In this document: positions 39,271-64,000 of the stretch, piece by piece
How the letters are laid out: each line of letters opens with the position of its first letter
How positions within the stretch are numbered: position 1 is the stretch's first letter
NCBI GenBank assembly: GCA_012026655.1
Contig: JAAILG010001443.1
Span: 1-64,000 of the forward strand
From: Hydrolagus affinis
Taxonomy: Eukaryota
Length of the DNA: 64,000 nucleotides
Direction: 5' to 3'
Notes under the pieces: model-generated
What the model was told of the DNA's origin: nothing
What the model saw: the letters and a program-made list of their open reading frames with translations, nothing else
Databases searched by the model: none
Made by a program: the position numbers and the translations under genes

Positions 39271-40004
39271 CAAAGGAACGTTGACCGTTTTACTGAAGGT
39301 CCTGCGTTCTAGTGTCAGGTGAGATCGCAAGTGTTCAAATTTCGGCAGAGTTCAGAGTTCTGTTCTCCCTTGTGCAACACGCCCGTTTGGAACAGCGCAT
39401 CGATTGGGAATAAAAGGTTCATAGAATTGACAGAATCAACCCCAACTTGTAGTATCAATGGATCATCATCACATACAATGCATGATTTCAGATCCTCAAT
39501 AAAATATCTGCCCACGGCACAGCATGGATGCTTGACCCGATGAGCTGGATGCCTTCTCATGTGCTGTAAATTTCTAACAAAAGATTCTATAAGGTTTCAA
39601 GCATTTCTTCCCACTTGACTTCTTAAGCAATAGATTTAAGCCACGTTCTGACCACTTTGTACCTGCCTGGGTTTTCATGTGCTGCAGGAAGCATTAAACT
39701 ACCATCCGATTGAGTCACAGAGACCCTTGTGTGGCACACATTAATCAGATGAGTGTTTCCATTTAATCAGATCTTTCACATAAAAGATCAGCAAGAACCA
39801 TTAACCTCTTGAGTTGAGGGCAACGTTCTGTTTCTAGGAAAACAACTGATTCAATCCAATGCAGTTGTGAAAGGTAACTTCCAGTGACTTGACTGCTGTG
39901 GCTGAATTGTCACTCTACAGAGAGATTATCTCTTACGTGTTCACTGTTTTGCATGCAGTGGATAAAAAAATATGTATTTAATGCATTCTATCATCATTTG
40001 ATGG

Positions 40005-40420
40005 TCTGAGTAATTGGTAGCACTCTTGTCTCTGAAGAAGAAGGCTGTGAGTTCAAGTGTCATGTCAGGACTAAGCTGACACTCCAATGCAGCACTGGGG
40101 GACTGCTGAATTGTCAGAGGTGCTGTTTTTCAAATAAGATGTTAAATCGAAGGTCCTGTCTGCTAGTTCGAGTGGATCAAAAGATTGATCAAAAATCCCA
40201 TTGCACTATTTGAAAAGAGAAGGAAGTTTCTCCCGCCGTCCTGGCCAACAATGAAATCAGTCATTCATTTCATGGCTGTTTGTGGGACATTGCTGTGCGC
40301 AAATTGCCTGCTGAATTCACCTACAAAATACAGTCACTACACTTATCAGTATATAATCTGCGAAGTGCTTGGAGACATCTTGATGATGTGATGATGCATA
40401 TCAAAAGCAAAGGCTATTAT
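40005..40420 (+). mobile_element. Older DeuSINE-like element (further copies ~5670-5980, 33950-34175, 46105-46940, 49860-50280, 53350-53720, 58930-59250)
   Basis: ggtagcactcttgtctctga...gctgacactccaatgcagcactg...ggctgtttgtgggacattgctgtgcgcaaattg. Confidence 0.75.
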
Positions 40421-41443
40421 ATATTGAATTCATAGGCATAAAATGGTATATGATTAGGCAACATCATTAGTAGGTTAGAGAGGCTAGGAATGAGATAATT
40501 TAAGCATGACAAAACCTTCAGATGGTGGCTTCAAATCCCAGCAAACGTAACATTATGCATGATTGTATTTATTAATCTAGGCTGGCTGTTTAATGAGAGA
40601 ATGCATGGGCCACATTGGAACAGAGCACAGCTGCATGTGAGGTTGTATCAACAATAAGAATATAATGATAAGATACATTTATATGGCGCCTTTCAGATGA
40701 AAGAAATGCCTCAAAGTGCCACAGAGTGAGATCATTAGGACTGAAAGTGATATGTTGTTAAGGAGGCAAAATGGGGTGGCTGATTTGCGCCAGGGATGTT
40801 CTACAAGATACAAGAATAATTTGATTTTGCATCTCTAATGTCAAACCATTTCAAAGCGCTTCACATGTAATTGCTGTCAAGCTCAGTAACTATGTGCTTG
40901 TAAGTGAAAATGAAATAGCCAACATATTGTATAAAGGAATGTACATGGAAGAAAAAGGCAAGATAACTAGATTCAGAGCCTTGGCAGCCTTTGTGTTTGC
41001 TCAGTACTGACAGTAGCCCCACCTCAGATCCAGAGTCCTGGAGTGCTAAGATATCAAAATAAACAGTCGTGACTTTCTGCAATGCAAACATAGTGATATG
41101 ACTGACCAAAATGAAAGGCTTCCCAAGATACAGTCGACCAGACATTGCACATTGAAGGTCATGATCGAAATTGCACATCTAATTTGGAAAGAACCAGGCT
41201 GCTTACCACATACTTTAATTGCATATCACAGTCAGAATAATAACCTTCTTTACTTTACTCTTGAATTACTCAGCTAGTGATTTTACCCCATGTATGATTA
41301 AGCTTCCCATCGCAATGAAAGAATCACTTCCTAATTCATAGTGTCTGTCTGTATCTTGCAATTTGTAGTCTATTTTAGTACCTTTTTCAAGTGCCACCCA
41401 CTTAGGTCACTGGACTGAGAACTGGTGTTATTTCATATTTATT

Positions 41444-56600: not shown

Positions 56601-58329
56601 ACCCTTTGCAAATAGTGTTGTGGGATCTTTAACTTCCACCTGAGACGGGATCTCAATTTAGTTACATTTAAAGGACACATACCAAAATACAGTCAATACC
56701 CAGTCTCAGTTATAGACACACCAATGTGTTCTAACCAGGACATTACATCAGTCCAAACTCATCGGAATCACTGATTTGATGTGGTTTTCCCATCACACCA
56801 ATACAAACACATTGCTATATACAATACAATAATATCAGGGCACTGTGAAACTCAGCACTCCAGTGAGATGGTGTTGACAACTGAGGACGATATTGCCTGC
56901 TTCCATGGAACCCCAATCCCATTTTCTCCTCTATCCCAAAGCGTAGTCATTAGCAAACCCAAATTCTGTCACTAATTCAGGCAAAGTACAGACTACATTA
57001 GAAAATCAAACTCTTAGCCTTGAAACTTGATGGTGATATTTTTCACCATTTTATATTTGTTTAAAAAGCATATTTAAATGGCTGGTTGGTCTCACAGAAT
57101 AGGGTTTGTATGTGGGGGGAGTGAGGGCGAGGGGAGGAATCTTCAGCCGTCACCCTAATAGACTAATCACTCAGGCCCTAGTGCTCAAAGCTGCTATGCA
57201 GTGTGTGCAAGAGGCCACAGTGAGAACAATGCTGAACAGTATTAAAGATGCAGAAGGAGAAGGAGAGATTCCTTCCTTGGCTCACCAAAAAATGCGTGAT
57301 CATCAGTCTGCTATACACAGTTGCCATACACAATGGAACCTCCTTGTTTCCCTTCAAACCCAGCTGAAAGTGAGTTTGTGTTATCTTCTGAAATGATGCA
57401 TTGCATTCTCCCAATATTCTCTGTCCAATAATTTGTACAATATTAAAGTGCCTGGCTCTGCCAGTCTCCGCCACTGTTAAGCACTCTGAGGCGCTACTCT
57501 ACGGGGAGGGCATTATACAACAACTTGCACAATATGTAAACTGTTATTATAATTGAACAAGGATGAGCCTTCTGGTTTTAATGGCCAGATTAAAGATCTG
57601 CAAATCCCAGACCCTCTGCTGTTACCTGTAGCTCCACTTGCCCAAATTCAATAGAAAGACTGAGATAGTGTTTCACTGGAGAGTTGGTAATTTTTCCTTT
57701 ACTGAGTGAGTGCTGCAGCTTGTTAGCTTGAAAACAGAGTGAGTGACTCCCCAATCTTGTGTGTCAGACCAGACCAGTTTAGACTGTGCAAGGAAGATTG
57801 TGGAGATTAACTCTTTAAAAGATAGCCACTGAGGCTAATTGCTCTTAAAGCTCCACATTCTCAGTCTACCAATCGAGCATTTTACGAGCGATATAAACGC
57901 ACATTTCAAATTGGCGAAAGATTGGCATAAACTAGCGATTGAATGAGAGAAGATCAGAGTCATATTAACCCTCCATCCTCCATCCTTCCTTCCCATTGGA
58001 ACCAAGTACACCCCTACAAACAAAACAATGTGTGACCTAACATTGAGTGCAATAAAACTGCCCTGATGCCAATGTATCGAAAATATTTTAATCTTGCGGA
58101 TTTCACAATTGATACAATACTTAAGGTGTCATTTTAATATACTGTACAATCATGTAATTTATAGTGGTTTACATCAAGGCACAACACACAGTATATATTA
58201 CATATATGCCTTGAGAGGCAACATTTAATATATCCCCGAGTTACTCAAGAGTTGCTGCCCAGATGAGGTTCTAAAAGCATTGGGGGGCTGGAAATCACAT
58301 TTGCACGTCTGAACCCAAGCATCATTAAA

Positions 58330-58663
58330 TAATATATGCCATCACTTTTATTTCAAATAAAATTTGCATATTAAAATCATGAAGGAATGTAAAAATGGTT
58401 GTGGTTCTTTGTCTTGTTGTGGTTCTACCATACATTACCAAGATGCTCTATAGCCCTAATGAAGATGAGGGAAGGGGTGGACAAAAAAAAACCAACTCAG
58501 ACAAAATCTAAACGAGTTTGAACTGTAACATTAAGAAGTTGTGGAGTGGATGTCTCCAATCGGTTGTATTTTTTTTGTCCCGTGCTTCTACAATGGAGGA
58601 AACAAGCCAAGCGACATCGAACAGAAATGAAAGAACTTTGTCTCGCCAGTTCCTGCTGTCAGC
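58330..58663 (-). other. CALCA: Probable non-coding terminal exon (exon 6, CGRP mRNA 3' UTR)
   Basis: Strong acceptor ctcctctacttttgtgtcttacag|g at 58664/58663 and minus-strand AATAAA at 58347-58352. Mammalian CGRP mRNA has such an exon after exon 5. There is no transcript evidence. Confidence 0.5.
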
Positions 58664-59899
58664 CTGTAAGACACAAAAGTAGAGGAGACTCCGTATTAAT
58701 AATAATAACCCTTACATTTGATAAGGTACCTTATCACGTCAATGAGACGTCTAAAAGCACTTCACAAAATATAAGTGAAGACTGTATTTGTGGGTGAAAC
58801 ACAACAGCCAATTGCGCAACATTCAGTATTTGCCTGCTTTTGGTGGGCAGTAGTCACTCTTGCGGGATTTAAATAAATTCATATATATTATATATATATA
58901 TATATATACTGTATATAAAATGCAACGTCAACTTCCTGAGACTTTACTTCCTTCGGATGAGATGTTAAACCGAGATCCCGTCTGCCTGTTCAGGTGGACA
59001 TTAATGATCCCTTGGCACTACTGTTTTTAAAGAGAGAATGGACTTTCTTCAGGTGTCCTGGCCAACAATCACTCAAATTTTAAAAAATTCACTTCATGAC
59101 TGGTTGTGGGACACAGCTGTGAGCAAATTGGCTGCTGTGTTCATTCACGAATACAAAGTCACTCCACTTCACAGTAAAATCTTGAAGTGCTTCGGGATGC
59201 CCTCCCGATGTGCCAGGTGCTATACTAAATTCAAGGATTATTTTTATTACGCCTCTTCAATGCTTTATTTAACAGCACTATAGCAGACAAACAAAGGGCC
59301 AAAGCTTACATCTGGTTTAAAGGCCAAGAGCAGCAATGGTTCTCTTGGTACGGTGTCGTTTGCAGTCAAACCTTTTTTTTTGCTGCTGCCAGTGCACAGT
59401 GGATGTAAATTTGTTGCATGCCCAACAAAAGGTTAAAAATAATTGCTAAAATTATTCCAAAAGACATCATTGAGGCATTTGCTTGATCCAATGGAGGGAG
59501 CAGGCTTGAAAGAGGAGGATGTTTGTATGTGTTTTTACAAAGCAAAGATTATGGCAATAAGTCTCTGCCAATTGATGAGTTACTATTAATTGGCATGTGT
59601 TCTGTACCCCCCATTCTGTACCCCCCGTTACTTCCATGTCAAAGATGCTATGTCATTGTAAAATGTGCTGTACTCCTGTTCTCAGACTCCCTCTTCGCAC
59701 GGTGACATCCACTGCCATGCCAGTTTGACATGAAAGTTGCTAGAGATGTCAGATGGGAATGCCTTGTTGAGCTTTGAACACAGTAAAGCATCAGTGTGTT
59801 AAAGTGAGTTTCTTTCCTCAGGCAACCTGCGACTAGAGAATTCATCTGAGATCTGGCGTGTGACTGAATCAGAACCGAAGGGGAATATATTCCCCGCAC

Positions 59900-60206
59900 T
59901 ACAGTCCGTCGATATGGAAATTTTCCGATATCTATATATCGGTTTGCCCATATCGATATATCGATATCGCGGGGTTTTTTGTCCTGCGCATGCGCGCGTA
60001 TTCGGGGGTGTGCTCGCATTCTGATGTGCTCGTGCATTCGAATATTGACAAGATAAGTTGAAGAAGTTCGCATTGTACCAATATATCGCCGGACACGATA
60101 TACCGATATTTTTTATATATCGAATTTTTTGATATACCGATATATTAGAATTTCCAATATCGGCATATCGATATGAAAAATTATACCGATATAACGCCGG
60201 ACCCTA
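59900..60206. mobile_element. Non-autonomous hAT-type DNA transposon (MITE), ~307 bp
   Basis: Imperfect TIRs: left tacagtccgtcgatat, right reverse complement tagggtccggcgttat. 8-bp TSD ccccgcac (59892-59899) / ccccacac (60207-60214). Subterminal (C)CGATAT/ATATCG repeats; CpG-rich. Confidence 0.8.
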
Positions 60207-60679
60207 CCCCACACATTCCACTTTGCAAAAGTTTCAAAGTATGAAGGATAACTCTCTTAATTTCACACACACCTAAACAAAACAAAAAGTGAGTAACTTT
60301 TTTTTGAAAGAGAATGTTTACATTACAACTCAACAAAATAATTCCCCCGGCTGCGATGTGATGGCGATACAGTGGACACAATTTCTCAACTATATTGGAC
60401 CACTTGCTCCATTCTACGGCTGTTTTCTGGGACACAGCTATGCGCAAACTGGCTGCCCTGCATCTCGCTCCCTATCCACACAGTCACTCCCATTTCACAG
60501 CAAGTCTCGTGAAGCACTTTGAGACGTCTGTCCGTCACGATAAGGCACCAATTGTACCAATTGCAAGGATTATTCTGATTAGGATTCATCATCGGTTACA
60601 TTTATACAGCAGTAAGCATTCCCCCGCACATTTCCTGGCAGTTAAAAGAAATGGGTCGTTTACCAGGTCCTTGGGTTAT

Positions 60680-60839
60680 CTACATCTGGGCATTCCTTCT
60701 TCGTCTTCCAAAGGCTGTGGCCCCCGTGTTGGTTGGTACAAAGTCACTGCTGCCGATTCCCCCTGTCCGGCTCAGGAAGTCAGCCAGGCGGTGAGTCGTA
60801 CATGTGGCTGTCTTACAGGCTCGCTTCTGCACAGTGACA
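60680..60839 (-). CDS. CALCA: CGRP-specific exon (exon 5): VTVQKR / CGRP 37 aa (60710-60820) / GRRRR NAQM
   Basis: Not in the ORF track. Manual translation after acceptor ttttttactctgaagcag|T gives (S)VTVQKR-ACKTATCTTHRLADFLSRTGGIGSSDFVPTNTGATAF-GRRRR-NAQM-stop (TAG at 60680-60682). It has the Cys2-Cys7 ring, 37 aa and a Phe-amide signal. A likely donor ctg|gtaaac lies at 60664/60663 shortly after the stop. Confidence 0.97.
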
Positions 60840-61462
60840 CTGCTTCAGAGTAAAAAAACAAACAACATGCATTTATCCAGCTCATTGTGTTCACATACAT
60901 GACTCACTGCTTATCAGACTTGATTTTTTGTTCTTTCAATGAAAGCCTGGGGATGGGGGGTGGGGGGGAGTGCGGGGAGAGGTAAAAGGTAAATTTACCC
61001 TTTAATTGGGTTAAATGTTTATAGTCAATGCATTTTACAATATATTCTGTAAGGCGCTTTGAGATGTCTCAACGATGTGAGAAGACGCCTCATCAATTGA
61101 AGGAATTATTGTGATTAACAATCACATCTAACCCACTGAATACCCACCTTTGCACTATTTTACTGACACCAGCCAACTGGTAGTTAAAGCTCTTGGCTCA
61201 ACTTAAACAGGAAAAAAATTCAGGTCACATCATGACTGGATATTGTGTTCCGGTCAGAGGCTGGAGGGTGGGAGCAGAGAGCCACAGAGTAAACCTCATA
61301 CAGTAAACCCCATTTGGTGTCAATTGGGAACCATACATTTAATGTGACTTATGCACAGTATGAGTTATGTCAAAGTTGCTTAGAATATAAACTCTTGAAT
61401 GCGACTTGAGCAACTGTGTACGAATTAGGCGTTACAGGGAACTCTGCACTTGGAAACCGATT

Positions 61463-61501
61463 GGGAGGGAGGGAGGGAGGGAGGGAGGGAGGGAGGGAGG
61501 G
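61463..61501 (+). repeat. (GGGA)n microsatellite, (CCCT)n on the CALC sense strand
   Basis: About 10 units just 3' (minus sense) of the CAG|GTAAGA element. Confidence 0.95.
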
Positions 61502-61512
61502 AAGAAATGAAT

Positions 61513-61540
61513 TCTTACCTGAAATAATGTAAAAGTCAGA
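61513..61540 (-). promoter_or_regulatory. Zero-length-exon element (pyrimidine tract-CAG|GTAAGA) in intron 4
   Basis: Minus strand reads tctgacttttacattatttcag|gtaagaattc. This is the same arrangement as the core of the human CT/CGRP intron-4 enhancer (pyrimidine tract followed by CAGGUAAGAC). Confidence 0.55.
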
Positions 61541-62140
61541 AAAGTTTCAAAAAGCAACCGGATGCAATGAAATGCACACTGACACCTCCACCTGGACTGT
61601 TTCAGCGAACACACTTGTGTATGTATATTAGATTCTCTTTTTTTCCCCCGAAAACACTCAAGATACGACATGAATGGACTTTGCTCTACTCTTTAATTTA
61701 CTCTTATTTGTTTAAGTGAAACTATGATCACTATTATTCCACATCACCAATGGCATCAAGGTGTAAGGCTGCACACAATAATTTAAATGCAATGCGAGTG
61801 ATGTTATCAACTCAGGGAAGGATCTCGACTTGAGATCCTCAGAGATCAACTCAGGGAAGGATCTCGATTGATTCATTTAAACCGCCCACCTACCAACACC
61901 CCCACCAGTCAGTTTGCAAAATACTATTGGGTTCTCGATTTCCAGAACTCCCGTTCAAGTAGAGAAATGAGCAAATGTATCCCTGGTAGAAAAATAAGTT
62001 TATTGAAACAAGAGACTCATGCCATGCACCAAGAAGCATTCATCGAAACGACACATTACTTACTTACTATACAAGTCACCGCAAAACGTGAAACGTAATG
62101 AGGGAAAAAAATCAGTTTGTTTTAAAGCTAAAGTGGTCGG

Positions 62141-62146
62141 TTTATT
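62141..62146 (-). terminator. Poly(A) signal of the calcitonin exon (AATAAA); alternative AATAAA at 61999-62004
   Basis: Plus-strand tttatt ~270 nt after the calcitonin stop, followed on the minus strand by a U-rich stretch (gattttttccctcattacgtttcacgtttt). Confidence 0.6.
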
Positions 62147-62350
62147 GACGGCCAGCTAAGCGAGGCTGCTGCACTATTCTAACCAATGTCCATGTCAAGC
62201 ATTCTCTGTTGAAAATGGAGTCAAGACGGGGAGGAAGGAGGAGGTGGTGGTGGTGGGAGGGTGGGGGAGAGGAAAAAAAACATAGCACTTTATCAGGCTT
62301 TCTCGTCATTCAAGTATCTGAGATCCATCCATCCATCCATCATTACAAAC

Positions 62351-62370
62351 TGTGTGCTGTGTGCTGTGTG

Positions 62371-62406
<36 letters not shown>
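62351..62406 (+). repeat. (TG)n microsatellite in the calcitonin 3' UTR
   Basis: tgtgtg run immediately downstream of the calcitonin stop codon. Confidence 0.95.
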
Positions 62407-62409
<3 letters not shown>

Positions 62410-62416
62410 TTTTTTT

Positions 62417-62615
62417 TTAGTTATTTTCGTAGGGCTCCCTGTAGTTTGCATAGCGTTGGTTTTCCAGCCCGGCCAGAATGCTCCTTTTCTTGCCGGGGGT
62501 CGCGGATCCCACATCAGTGCGTTGAATGGTTTGCAATTTGTGCAACTCCTGGGACAACTTGCCCACCACACAAGTGCTAAGACTGGTGCACCGTTTGGCA
62601 ATGGGTCTATCCAAG
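62417..62615 (-). CDS. CALCA: Calcitonin-specific exon (exon 4): LDRPIAKR / calcitonin 32 aa (62495-62590) / GKKR / 21-aa C-terminal flanking peptide
   Basis: Acceptor tttctctccgcag|C at 62616/62615 is phase-compatible with exon 3 (AG+C = Ser). It encodes [59 protein letters not shown]-stop, with the Cys1-Cys7 ring, C-terminal Pro, and Gly amidation plus dibasic cleavage signals. Confidence 0.98.
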
Positions 62616-62657
62616 CTGCGGAGAGAAACGTGCAGAAGAGATCTCATAGTAACGAGG

Positions 62658-63126
62658 CATGCGGGACCATGCAGATACCCTGTCTCACAAGGCAAACCAA
62701 CCAACCAACCATTGTTAACATGCAACAACAAAAAAACACACTCCTCTGTCCTGTACTTGGCAAACCGAATTCCTTAATGTCAGGCATTCACTATCACTGC
62801 TACAAGTCAGGTCTTTCTAACGCGAATGCATGTCATGCTTTTCTCTCTTTCTATCTCTCTCTCTCTTTCTCGTTGCATTATTTTTTTTGAATCCAAATGT
62901 GGTTATGCGAAACATTTCGAAATGTCCTCTCATCCAAGTCTGACCATGCATTTGATTGGGTTAATTGTCGAAACGAAAACGAGCTTCCACATTCACAATG
63001 GACATGCATAAAACAGGCATCTCGCCACACTATACACACACACTCACACACACACAAGTCGCATCCATGACTAGCATTTCCTTGCAGCAGGCACATGGAG
63101 GTTGTCCTAACGCTTTCTCCCATGCA
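62658..63126 (-). promoter_or_regulatory. Cluster of RBFOX-type (U)GCAUG splicing elements in intron 3 upstream of the calcitonin exon
   Basis: Sense TGCATG at 62668-62673, 62719-62724, 62945-62950, 63003-63008 and 63121-63126. GCATG at 62658-62662 and 62834-62838. Confidence 0.7.
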
Positions 63127-63562
63127 AGACATTTCGAGACAGGGAAATGGACCTCATTTTGGTGATTCCACTACTCGTCTTTCTCTTTTGTTTAAAAAGA
63201 AAAACACATACCTTGTGTTTAAGCCTCAATGCTTTTTTTTTTGTTTCCCCCTTAAAATATCAACCGTTTGCACAATCACCGGTTTCCCCCATTGTGACAG
63301 ATAATTTGAGATAATTCTGGCTAATTGGTGGGAAAGCAAATCAGTTACATATTAATTAAAACAGAAACCCCCTCCTCAAAAAAAAATCACCCCAGGATCT
63401 CGCTGTGGAGGAAACCAGGTTTGCTTCACTGCAATCTACTATTTCAAGAACAGACCCGAGTCTTGCAAATAAATAACATTAATATTTCCACACATTGTTT
63501 CCATATACAAGGCTGAGGCATCAATGTTCATTGGTTGTGTGTGTGGGGTGTGGGGGTGTTAC

Positions 63563-63694
63563 CTGTTGCCATCTGGTACTTGTTGTTCCAGTTCCTCCGC
63601 CATCATCTGCATGAACTCCCTGACCAACGCGTTCAGTAGCCTCCGGACTTCATAATCAGTAAGCGCCACCCTATCGGATGATTGTAAGATGGAT
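63563..63694 (-). CDS. CALCA: Calcitonin/CGRP precursor, common pro-region exon (equivalent to mammalian exon 3)
   Basis: Minus strand reads ttctcgcccacag|A TCC ATC...GGC AAC AG|gtaaca. The exon is 132 nt, phase 2/2, and encodes (R)[43 protein letters not shown](S), matching the '[22 protein letters not shown]' pro-calcitonin motif. The signal-peptide exon lies beyond the window end. Confidence 0.96.
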
Positions 63695-63779
63695 CTGTGG
63701 GCGAGAACCTCAGGGTAAGGAACCCGTGTCCAAGGCGGGCTGATAGGTTGGCCCAAGGCCAATCCAACCCATCGTCCAA

Positions 63780-63990
63780 TAACACTCCCAGCCCAATACA
63801 ATCCAAATCCTAAAATATCTCAACCCAATAAAACCCAAATATATCTCTACCCAATAAACCCAAACATTTCTATCCACTAAAACCCAAACCCAAATATATT
63901 TCTACCCAATAAATCACAAACCTAAATAGATCTCTACCCCAATACAACCCAACCCAAATACGACTCAAGCCCAATCAAAGCCAAGCCCAC
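63780..63990 (+). repeat. Degenerate low-complexity minisatellite (acccaat/aaacccaa units) in CALC intron 2
   Basis: Repeated (at)ctctacccaataaa(a)cccaaa units. Confidence 0.75.
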
Positions 63991-64000
63991 ACACGGCTGT

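What the first reader, a model, noticed from the sequence alone, without database searches (positions are those of the whole stretch)
62616..63562. Dense, strand-biased RBFOX (UGCAUG) cluster guarding the calcitonin exon in a cartilaginous-fish CALC gene
Seen: the 947-nt intron 3 has five sense TGCATG and two more GCATG, all within 62658-63126, against one antisense TGCATG. About 0.2 would be expected at uniform base composition. The nearest copies are 43-58 nt upstream of the calcitonin acceptor. Established: in mammals RBFOX1/2 bind UGCAUG just upstream of and inside exon 4 to repress calcitonin splicing in neurons. The human exonic copy is spelled by the Cys7-Met8 codons (TGC ATG); here the peptide has Cys7-Val8 (TGT GTG), so the exonic site is absent. 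Inference: the neuronal CT-to-CGRP switch is RBFOX-driven and ancestral to jawed vertebrates, and this lineage uses an all-intronic, multiplied element set.
Basis: partly seen in the sequence, partly recalled or inferred. Interest (0 to 1): 0.8.

Follow-up and report, generated by a model that had tools for sequence, protein, structure and literature searches.

The report
Conserved RBFOX-motif cluster before calcitonin exon
The intron in front of the calcitonin exon of this chimaera-like fish carries a real, strand-specific cluster of the RNA motif that, in mammals, makes neurons skip that exon, and a bird and a ray-finned fish carry the same kind of cluster, so the arrangement looks very old and is not special to this lineage.

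Summary
The gene lies on the minus strand. Its 947-nt intron 3 (62616-63562) holds 5 sense UGCAUG and 2 further sense GCAUG, all in the last 512 nt, against 1 antisense TGCATG. About 0.3 sense UGCAUG is expected (Poisson P about 2e-5). Only 4 of 300 simulated windows reach 5 copies in any 947-nt span on either strand.

The copies are not a repeat family, and the intron is low-copy DNA.

Two unrelated CT/CGRP loci came from metagenome contigs, one bird-like (L001) and one ray-finned-fish-like (L002). In the last 470 nt of intron 3 they have 9 and 10 sense GCAUG, against 6 in the window. None of 2000 shuffles reaches the observed count in any of the three. GCAUG and UGCAUG rank first of all 1024 pentamers and 4096 hexamers for joint enrichment.

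The best reading is an RBFOX-type intronic silencer set for the calcitonin exon, orthologous to the mammalian one.

The claim that the set is lineage-specific and "all-intronic, multiplied" is not supported. That state is shared with the bird and the fish and is probably ancestral.

RNA reads gave no evidence on splicing. The scan also noted a UGCAUG cluster in another gene of this genome.

The parts
63563..63695 (-). Exon 3 of the CT/CGRP gene (common region, ..[43 protein letters not shown])
   Evidence: ORF and splice-site reading. It is 95% identical to the Callorhinchus milii CALCA isoform P0062.
62616..63562 (-). Intron 3, 947 nt, low-copy sequence
   Evidence: Donor GU at 63562 and acceptor AG at 62617-62616. 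Word depth in X1 is low compared with the neighbouring interspersed repeats. No repeat family covers the motifs.
63121..63126 (-). Sense UGCAUG at -511..-506
63003..63008 (-). Sense UGCAUG(U) at -393..-388
62945..62950 (-). Sense UGCAUG at -335..-330
62834..62838 (-). Sense GCAUG (AGCAUG) at -223..-219
62719..62724 (-). Sense UGCAUG(U) at -109..-104
62668..62673 (-). Sense UGCAUG at -58..-53, the proximal full site
   Evidence: A UGCAUG lies at -62 and -52 in L001 and at -67 and -34 in L002.
62658..62662 (-). Sense GCAUG (within the palindrome GCAUGC) at -47..-43
   Evidence: Its AUGCC is mirrored in the intron read-through N-terminus of C. milii protein P0001. This rests on back-translation only.
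62629..62634 (-). UGCACG at -19..-14, a one-mismatch variant inside the polypyrimidine and branch region
   Evidence: That GCACG is a weaker RBFOX motif is recalled, not tested here.
62417..62615 (-). Coding part of calcitonin exon 4 ([38 protein letters not shown]; stop at 62417-62419). It holds no (U)GCAUG.
   Evidence: (95% identical to C. milii calcitonin)
61980..62416 (-). Putative 3'UTR of exon 4, with AAUAAA at 62146-62141 and 62004-61999. The 3' end is approximate.
   Evidence: The distal poly(A) region is 25 of 26 nt identical to L002. A few X3 reads lie on 62001-62600.
62018..62028 (-). Tandem UGCAUGGCAUG, 13 nt upstream of the distal AAUAAA of exon 4
61511..61521 (-). CAGGUAAGAAU, a pseudo-5' splice site in intron 4, followed by a (CCCU)n tract. 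It resembles the mammalian intron-4 polyadenylation enhancer.
Evidence: AGGTAAGAA is invariant in the window, L001 and L002.
60866..60871 (-). Sense UGCAUG at -32..-27 upstream of the CGRP exon 5 acceptor
60664..60839 (-). CGRP exon 5 (KR-ACKTATCTTHRLADFLSRTGGIGSSDFVPTNTGATAF-GRRRR). The donor at 60663 is putative.
   Evidence: It is 92% identical to C. milii CGRP isoform P0062.

Best explanation
The seven sense (U)GCAUG copies in the last 512 nt of intron 3 are a homotypic cluster of RBFOX binding sites. They act on the pre-mRNA as an intronic splicing silencer of the calcitonin-specific exon 4.

Proposed mechanism: in cells rich in RBFOX proteins (neurons), the protein occupies these sites. 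The proximal pair (UGCAUG at -58, GCAUG at -47) and possibly UGCACG at -19 would then hinder recognition of the branch point and 3' splice site of exon 4. Exon 3 is joined to CGRP exon 5 instead. In calcitonin-producing cells the sites stay empty, and exon 4 is spliced and polyadenylated.

Shown here: the gene structure, the cluster, its strand bias, and an equivalent cluster in a bird-like and a ray-finned-fish-like CT/CGRP locus.

Inferred from mammalian work: RBFOX binding, the direction of the effect, and the step that is blocked.
For: 1. Enrichment and strand bias in the window. There are 5 sense UGCAUG and 2 further GCAUG against 1 antisense TGCATG. Poisson P is 1.9e-5, and 4 of 300 simulated windows reach the count in the scan statistic. 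UGCAUG is the top non-microsatellite hexamer of the intron.

2. The cluster is not a repeat or a transposon. The motif contexts differ and no repeat family covers them. The intron is low-copy in X1.

3. The same feature occurs in two independent loci, counted over the last 470 nt of intron 3.
- L001 (exon 4 98.5% identical to bird CALCA) has 9 sense and 3 antisense GCAUG.
- L002 (best match Amia, 78%) has 10 sense and 0 antisense.
- The window has 6 sense and 2 antisense.
- 0 of 2000 dinucleotide shuffles reach the sense count in any of the three.
- The rest of each locus has 0.47-0.71 sense GCAUG per 470 nt.

4. In an unbiased test, GCATG is first of 1024 pentamers and TGCATG first of 4096 hexamers for enrichment in all three loci.

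5. Of the 5 antisense GCATG across the three loci, 4 are the other strand of a palindromic GCATGC (positions). The bias is towards the RNA strand.

6. The mammalian precedent is in review PMC2777236, of which I read passages. Fox-1/Fox-2 repress calcitonin exon 4 through UGCAUG at -34 and +45, blocking SF1 and U2AF65 recruitment. Upstream (U)GCAUG generally represses an exon. Several GCAUG copies upstream of F1gamma exon 9 act in the same way. L002 has a UGCAUG at exactly -34.

7. Other parts of the mammalian-type architecture are present: the CGRP exon, the pseudo-5' splice site in intron 4, and the poly(A) region.

8. CT (139 aa) and CGRP (126 aa) isoforms with identical N-termini are annotated in Chiloscyllium plagiosum and Leucoraja erinacea.
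Against: - There is no RNA evidence. Three single-cell poly(A) RNA runs, labelled as a different organism code, gave almost no reads on exons 3-5 and no exon-exon joints.
Conservation within Chondrichthyes is untested.
- The intron ends of the window and the two comparators do not align better than shuffles (z 1.4 and 1.5; 114 and 109 of 1000 shuffles reach the score). What is shared is the cluster, not its positions, so independent gain cannot be excluded.
- Only about 500 nt of intron 3 is present in L001 and L002.
- The predicted single-strandedness of the seven motifs is unremarkable (percentiles 0.08-0.71 of intron hexamers).
- A UGCAUG also lies at -32 of CGRP exon 5. On the simple position rule this would repress the exon that neurons use.
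- A Markov model of order 3 trained on the intron itself gives 5 or more copies in 24% of simulations. That model is circular.
Confidence: 0.75

Rival explanations
1. The cluster is a functional RNA element, but it does something other than neuron-specific repression of the exon 4 acceptor. [quoted passage not shown] It might act with the downstream copies (62018-62028, 60866-60871) as a distributed set that activates exon 5. It might be read by broadly expressed RBFOX2 or another factor, or control retention of intron 3.
For: - Further (U)GCAUG copies lie 13 nt upstream of the distal AAUAAA of exon 4 and at -32 of exon 5.
- L001 and L002 also have copies in the 3'UTR and intron 4, at non-conserved places.
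- C. milii protein P0001 starts inside the end of intron 3, so a transcript holding that part of the intron exists.
- Table 2 of PMC3647115 lists Fox-1/2 motifs between poly(A) sites with effect 'unknown'.
Against: The density is concentrated upstream of exon 4 in all three loci: 6, 9 and 10 copies in 470 nt, against 0.5-0.7 per 470 nt elsewhere. In mammals, the upstream site of this very exon was shown to repress it (review passages).
Confidence: 0.15
2. The motifs act at the DNA level, as binding sites of an intronic transcriptional enhancer, not on the RNA.
For: Homotypic clusters of short motifs are typical of enhancers. Nothing here tests transcription.
Against: There is a strong bias to the transcribed strand's sense in all three loci: 25 sense against 5 antisense GCATG. 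Four of the five antisense copies are palindromic overlaps. Factors that bind DNA usually tolerate both orientations. The motif equals the RBFOX consensus.
Confidence: 0.05
3. Chance or local composition: the cluster has no function.
For: The motif was chosen by a reader who knew the mammalian story. Higher-order Markov models trained on the intron itself reproduce the count fairly often (order 2: 1.9%; order 3: 24%). Intron positions do not align across lineages.
Against: - 4 of 300 simulated windows reach the count in the scan statistic.
- The motif ranks at the top in unbiased k-mer tests.
- The cluster recurs in two unrelated loci, with 0 of 2000 shuffles reaching the count in each.
Confidence: 0.03

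Closest known systems
Fox-1/Fox-2 (RBFOX1/2) silencers of calcitonin exon 4 in the human CALCA gene (Zhou, Baraniak & Lou 2007; Zhou & Lou 2008; seen here only through passages of review PMC2777236)
   Same: It is the same gene and the same regulated exon. The UGCAUG lies on the sense strand a few tens of nt upstream of the exon 4 acceptor. The CGRP exon downstream and the pseudo-5' splice site element in intron 4 are the same.
   Different: The human model uses two sites, -34 intronic and +45 exonic. Here there is no exonic site (Cys7-Val8 = UGU GUG). The nearest full site is at -58, and there are seven intronic copies spread over 512 nt. Binding and function are untested here.
Distributed GCAUG pentameric repeats of the rat calcitonin/CGRP gene (Hedjran et al. 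1997 PNAS). I saw only the reference entry in PMC2777236; the paper was not held and its content is recalled.
   Same: Several GCAUG copies are distributed around exon 4 and act together on the CT/CGRP choice. That is the same idea as a 'multiplied element set'.
   Different: I could not read the paper, so the numbers and places of the rat repeats cannot be compared. The window's copies are concentrated in intron 3.
Fox-1-dependent skipping of exon 9 of human F1gamma, through several GCAUG copies in the upstream intron (PMC2777236 passages; PMC2018636 abstract)
   Same: Multiple GCAUG copies in the upstream intronic flank repress the downstream exon.
   Different: It is a different gene and a cassette exon, not a terminal exon with its own poly(A) site.
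UGCAUG repeats of the fibronectin EIIIB intron (Lim & Sharp 1998; reference entry only)
   Same: A homotypic cluster of UGCAUG in one intron controls a cell-type-specific exon.
   Different: Those repeats lie downstream of the exon and activate it (recalled).

Membership tests
RBFOX-dependent upstream intronic silencer of calcitonin exon 4 (CALCA type) | The host is a CT/CGRP gene, with a calcitonin exon followed by a CGRP exon. | tested here: met
   The CT peptide lies in the exon starting at 62615, and the CGRP peptide lies at 60664-60839. They are 95% and 92% identical to C. milii CT and CGRP.
RBFOX-dependent upstream intronic silencer of calcitonin exon 4 (CALCA type) | (U)GCAUG lies on the RNA strand in the intron just upstream of the exon, above chance. 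| tested here: met
   There are 7 sense copies in the last 512 nt, the nearest at -58 and -47.
RBFOX-dependent upstream intronic silencer of calcitonin exon 4 (CALCA type) | The motifs are conserved in orthologous introns. | tested here: met
   This holds for the cluster as a feature. L001 has 9 and L002 has 10 sense GCAUG in 470 nt, and the motif ranks first in the joint k-mer test. Individual positions are not alignable with the window. No other chondrichthyan was tested.
RBFOX-dependent upstream intronic silencer of calcitonin exon 4 (CALCA type) | A second, exonic UGCAUG (+45 in human) gives two-step repression. | tested here: not met
   There is no (U)GCAUG between 62615 and 62029 on the sense strand. 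The codons at +44..+49 are UGU GUG. The bird-like and fish-like CT peptides, and all 11 aligned precursors, also have Val at position 8.
RBFOX-dependent upstream intronic silencer of calcitonin exon 4 (CALCA type) | RBFOX protein binds the sites and represses exon 4. | not testable with these tools
   This needs CLIP, gel shift or a minigene. That the RBFOX RRM and its GCAUG specificity are conserved from nematodes to mammals is taken from PMC2777236.
RBFOX-dependent upstream intronic silencer of calcitonin exon 4 (CALCA type) | The choice between exon 4 and exon 5 is tissue-specific. | tested here: inconclusive
   Read laying on three RNA runs gave depth of 2 or less on exon 4 in one run, about 0 on exons 3 and 5, and no joints. 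Both isoforms are annotated in two elasmobranchs, and C. milii has one of each kind. Tissue data were not seen.
Intron-4 polyadenylation enhancer of CT/CGRP (pseudo-exon with a 5' splice site sequence; Lou et al., recalled; listed in Table 2 of PMC3647115) | [quoted passage not shown] | tested here: met
   CAGGUAAGAAU lies at 61521-61511, followed by (CCCU)n. AGGTAAGAA is invariant in the window, L001 and L002. Function was not tested.

The most novel reading that the evidence does not exclude
The whole cis-regulatory layout of the CT/CGRP choice predates the split of cartilaginous and bony vertebrates, about 450 million years ago (date from the abstract of PMC6238376 in the listing). That layout comprises a multivalent (U)GCAUG cluster in the last ~500 nt of intron 3, the exon 4 poly(A) region, and the pseudo-5' splice site in intron 4. 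The cluster would have been kept as a number of sites, by turnover of individual copies, not as fixed positions. This implies selection for multivalent RBFOX loading. On this reading the mammalian two-site arrangement, with its exonic Cys7-Met8 copy, is a derived, slimmed-down version.
Probability: 0.6. Interest if true: 0.6.

Novelty: new member of a known kind. Interest (0 to 1): 0.5.

Why it matters
CT/CGRP is the textbook case of tissue-specific alternative RNA processing. Its RBFOX silencers have been dissected in mammals only.

A chimaera-like fish, a bird and a ray-finned fish all carry a dense, sense-strand (U)GCAUG cluster in the same intron segment. This makes it likely that the switch and its reader are as old as jawed vertebrates.

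It also gives a natural example of a splicing-regulatory cluster that is conserved in copy number but not in position. Such a cluster can be used to test whether multivalency matters for RBFOX action.

It is not a new kind of system.

Tried and rejected
- Orthologous chondrichthyan introns. I asked look-up of encoding contigs for P0004, P0003 and P0006.
- Scans with alignment A1. Nothing was found in genome contigs (0 relatives among 47 pattern matches) or in viral contigs (0 among 135).
- RNA evidence. The look-up of sequencing runs listed 4 runs. One holds the DNA. Three are RNA runs of another organism code, added because they belong to the same study. Read laying on 58001-64000 showed RNA reads almost only on the interspersed repeats (58600-59400, 59800-60200, 61000-61400). 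There were no exon joints of this gene.
- Repeat or transposon origin of the motifs: rejected.
- Positional homology of the motifs between the window and the comparators: not significant.
- Motif accessibility by local folding: unremarkable.
- Papers not held: PMC1800674, PMC2519742, PMC24936, PMC548355. What I say of Zhou 2007/2008 comes from passages of review PMC2777236. What I say of Hedjran 1997 and Lou et al. is recalled.
- Print search. I searched for conservation of the CALC intron 3 cluster outside mammals, and for chondrichthyan CT/CGRP splicing. I found no such report in that library. PMC6283891 (2018, passages) says no CGRP gene had been reported from cartilaginous fishes. RefSeq-type names show that such genes are now annotated.
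- Supplements were not consulted.
- That the human +45 site equals the Cys7-Met8 codons was not checked against human sequence. It is an inference from the exon layout of this gene, where Cys7 starts at +44.
Full report
WHAT IS THERE

The gene reads on the minus strand. Exon 3 is 63563-63695. It encodes ..[43 protein letters not shown] and ends at a GU donor at 63562.

The next exon starts at 62615, after the acceptor ...cucuccgcag. It encodes [44 protein letters not shown]..., a calcitonin precursor segment.

I searched that exon alone; the query ORF contains intron read-through, and scoring was limited to residues 40-104. It hit calcitonin/CGRP precursors of many vertebrates. The best hit was Callorhinchus milii calcitonin at 95%, followed by sharks and rays at 78-88%. 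The window therefore comes from a holocephalan-like cartilaginous fish that is not C. milii itself.

A CGRP exon (KR-ACKTATCTTHRLADFLSRTGGIGSSDFVPTNTGATAF-GRRRR) lies downstream at about 60664-60839. It is 92% identical to the C. milii CGRP isoform P0062. No second CT or CGRP-like exon is in the window.

THE OBSERVATION

- Five sense UGCAUG lie at -511, -393, -335, -109 and -58 relative to the acceptor.
- Two further sense GCAUG lie at -223 and -47.
- One antisense TGCATG is present.
- None of the seven copies lies in the 5' 435 nt of the intron.

The motif is not common in the window. There are 48 copies on both strands, against 62.9 +/- 7.3 in shuffles, with 21 of them on the minus strand.
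- Poisson P(>=5 | 0.31) is 1.9e-5.
- A first-order Markov model trained on the intron gives 5 or more copies in 0.025% of 20,000 simulations.
- Orders 2 and 3 give 1.9% and 24%, but those models learn the motif from its own copies.
- Allowing any 947-nt span on either strand of order-3 simulated windows, 4 of 300 reach five copies.

Without choosing the motif beforehand, UGCAUG is rank 2 of the 730 hexamers present in the sense intron, and GCAUG is rank 2 of 501 pentamers. Both stand behind only the (UG)n microsatellite words.

The copies have different flanks and belong to no repeat family. The intron is low-copy in the DNA run X1, whereas 58600-59400, 59800-60200 and 61000-61400 are very high-copy interspersed repeats.

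COMPARISON WITH OTHER LINEAGES

I then scanned metagenome contigs with an alignment of 11 CT precursors (A1). Two loci came back.
- L001 has an exon 4 peptide 98.5% identical to bird CALCA proteins.
- L002 has its best match in bowfin (78%), then gar and teleosts, so it is a ray-finned fish.
- Both carry a CGRP exon downstream of the CT exon.
- Each holds only the last ~500 nt of intron 3.

Counts of GCAUG in the last 470 nt of intron 3:

| Locus | Sense GCAUG | Antisense GCAUG | UGCAUG | Shuffles reaching the sense GCAUG count | Sense GCAUG per 470 nt in the rest of the locus |
|---|---|---|---|---|---|
| Window | 6 | 2 | 4 | 0 of 2000 | 0.64 |
| L001 | 9 | 3 | 4 | 0 of 2000 | 0.71 |
| L002 | 10 | 0 | 5 | 0 of 2000 | 0.47 |

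Four of the five antisense copies are the other strand of a palindromic GCAUGC.

In an unbiased test over all k-mers, GCATG ranks first of 1024 pentamers for enrichment in all three loci at once, and TGCATG ranks first of 4096 hexamers.

Each locus has a full UGCAUG 50-70 nt upstream of the acceptor: -58 in the window, -62 and -52 in L001, -67 in L002. L002 has another at -34, the position given for the human site in the review.

The intron ends themselves do not align with the window better than shuffled sequence (z 1.4 and 1.5). The bird-like and fish-like ends align weakly (z 3.6; 4 of 1000 shuffles), with two motifs in register. What is shared is therefore the cluster, not the exact positions.

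One small extra hint comes from C. milii protein P0001. It begins MPCYYEISLHVSLRS, which is a read-through of the last ~45 nt of intron 3. The window gives MPRYYEIS.. in one frame and ..LLHVSLRS in the exon frame. The two species thus share that stretch, including the AUGCC of the -47 GCAUGC. This rests on back-translation and does not reach the -58 site.

HOW IT MOST LIKELY WORKS

Passages of review PMC2777236 state several relevant points.
- Fox-1 family proteins bind (U)GCAUG with unusual specificity, through an RRM conserved from nematodes to mammals.
- Sites in the upstream intronic flank repress an exon.
- In human CT/CGRP pre-mRNA, Fox-1/Fox-2 repress exon 4 through UGCAUG at -34, which blocks SF1 at the branch point (E' complex).
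- They also act through UGCAUG at +45, which blocks Tra2beta/SRp55 and U2AF65 (E complex).
- Several GCAUG copies upstream of F1gamma exon 9 act likewise.

The window has the same gene, the same exon and the same motif on the RNA strand, close to the branch and polypyrimidine region. I therefore read the cluster as an RBFOX-type silencer set for the calcitonin exon, with confidence 0.75. The gene structure, the enrichment, the strand bias and the recurrence in two other lineages are shown. Binding, the direction of the effect and the step blocked are inferred.

A UGCACG at -19..-14 may be a weaker extra site. That GCACG is a secondary RBFOX motif is recalled, not tested.

RESULTS THAT DO NOT HELP, OR THAT CUT THE OTHER WAY

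- The three RNA runs are single-cell poly(A) libraries under another organism code. They gave a depth of at most about 2 on exon 4 in one run (X3, 62001-62600). They gave next to nothing on exons 3 and 5, and no joints. Neither expression pattern nor splicing could be read.
- Predicted local accessibility of the seven motifs is ordinary.
- A UGCAUG also lies at -32..-27 of CGRP exon 5, and a tandem UGCAUGGCAUG lies 13 nt upstream of the distal AAUAAA of exon 4. Such downstream copies exist in L001 and L002 too, but at other places. They fit a 'distributed repeats' picture better than a pure upstream-silencer picture, and they keep rival 1 alive.

The exonic site is indeed absent: Cys7-Val8 is UGU GUG. 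But all 11 aligned CT precursors, from sharks, rays, chimaera, gar and bowfin, have Cys-Val there. So do the bird-like and fish-like loci. The intronic cluster is denser in those two loci than here.

The all-intronic, multi-copy state is therefore the widespread state and probably the ancestral one. The mammalian exonic copy goes with Met8; the human CT sequence is recalled and was not checked here.

CT (139 aa) and CGRP (126 aa) isoforms with identical N-termini are annotated on the same contigs in Chiloscyllium plagiosum and Leucoraja erinacea. C. milii has one isoform of each kind. CT/CGRP alternative processing in cartilaginous fishes is thus already in the databases, although a 2018 review still said that no CGRP gene had been reported from them (PMC6283891 passages).

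COMPARISON WITH WHAT IS KNOWN, AND NOVELTY

This is the orthologue of a known mammalian regulatory element, so I class it as a new member of a known kind.

In five full-text searches I found no paper describing the intron 3 (U)GCAUG cluster outside mammals, or its conservation. The primary papers (Zhou 2007/2008, Hedjran 1997, Minovitsky 2005) were not held. They may contain cross-species remarks that I could not see.

I set interest at 0.5. The finding is solid and gives a deep-time example of a homotypic splicing-silencer cluster maintained by turnover. A specialist would find it expected, not surprising.

The scan also holds a first-reader note of a UGCAUG cluster in another gene of this genome (s1-906696), which I did not examine.

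Noticed in passing
window 61511-61521 (minus strand), with the (CCCU)n tract at 61455-61510; L001 about 1349-1359; L002 about 1298-1306: The pseudo-5' splice site CAGGUAAGAAU lies in intron 4. AGGTAAGAA is invariant in the chimaera-like, bird-like and fish-like loci.
   Followed up: partly
window 61982-62007 (minus strand); L002 1121-1147: The distal poly(A) signal region of the calcitonin exon (UUCAAUAAAC.UAUUUUUCUACCAGG) is 25 of 26 nt identical between the window and the ray-finned-fish-like locus. It is not conserved in the bird-like locus.
   Followed up: partly
window 63029-63057 and 62357-62406 (minus strand): A sense (UG)n tract in intron 3 and a sense (CA)n tract in the exon 4 3'UTR form a 24-nt, 96% complementary inverted repeat (I1). 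If paired in RNA, it would loop out five of the seven motifs, the acceptor and the whole calcitonin coding part. L001 and L002 also have low-complexity inverted repeats that bracket exon 4, at 21 nt 81% and 27 nt 74%. This may be chance between microsatellites.
   Followed up: partly
window 62018-62028 and 60866-60871 (minus strand): A tandem UGCAUGGCAUG lies 13 nt upstream of the distal AAUAAA of exon 4. A UGCAUG lies at -32..-27 of the CGRP exon 5 acceptor.
   Followed up: partly
window 39950-40637 (plus strand): This is the second densest TGCATG cluster of the window. It has four plus-strand copies in 688 nt, three of them within 82 nt at 40556-40637. The gene context was not examined.
   Followed up: no
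window 58600-59400, 59800-60200, 61000-61400: These are very high-copy interspersed repeats downstream of and within the CT/CGRP gene. Word depth reaches 1e5 in X1, and they carry many RNA reads from X2-X4 with loose ends.
   Followed up: no
window 63793-63985: A degenerate tandem array of ~25-33-nt units (CCCAAT/AAACCCAAAT-rich) lies in intron 2, upstream of exon 3 (families D1 and D2).
   Followed up: no
P0001 (C. milii V9KUC7), compared with window 62616-62661: The database protein starts inside the end of intron 3 (MPCYYEISLHVSLRS). A C. milii calcitonin transcript that retains, or starts in, intron 3 was therefore sequenced.
   Followed up: partly
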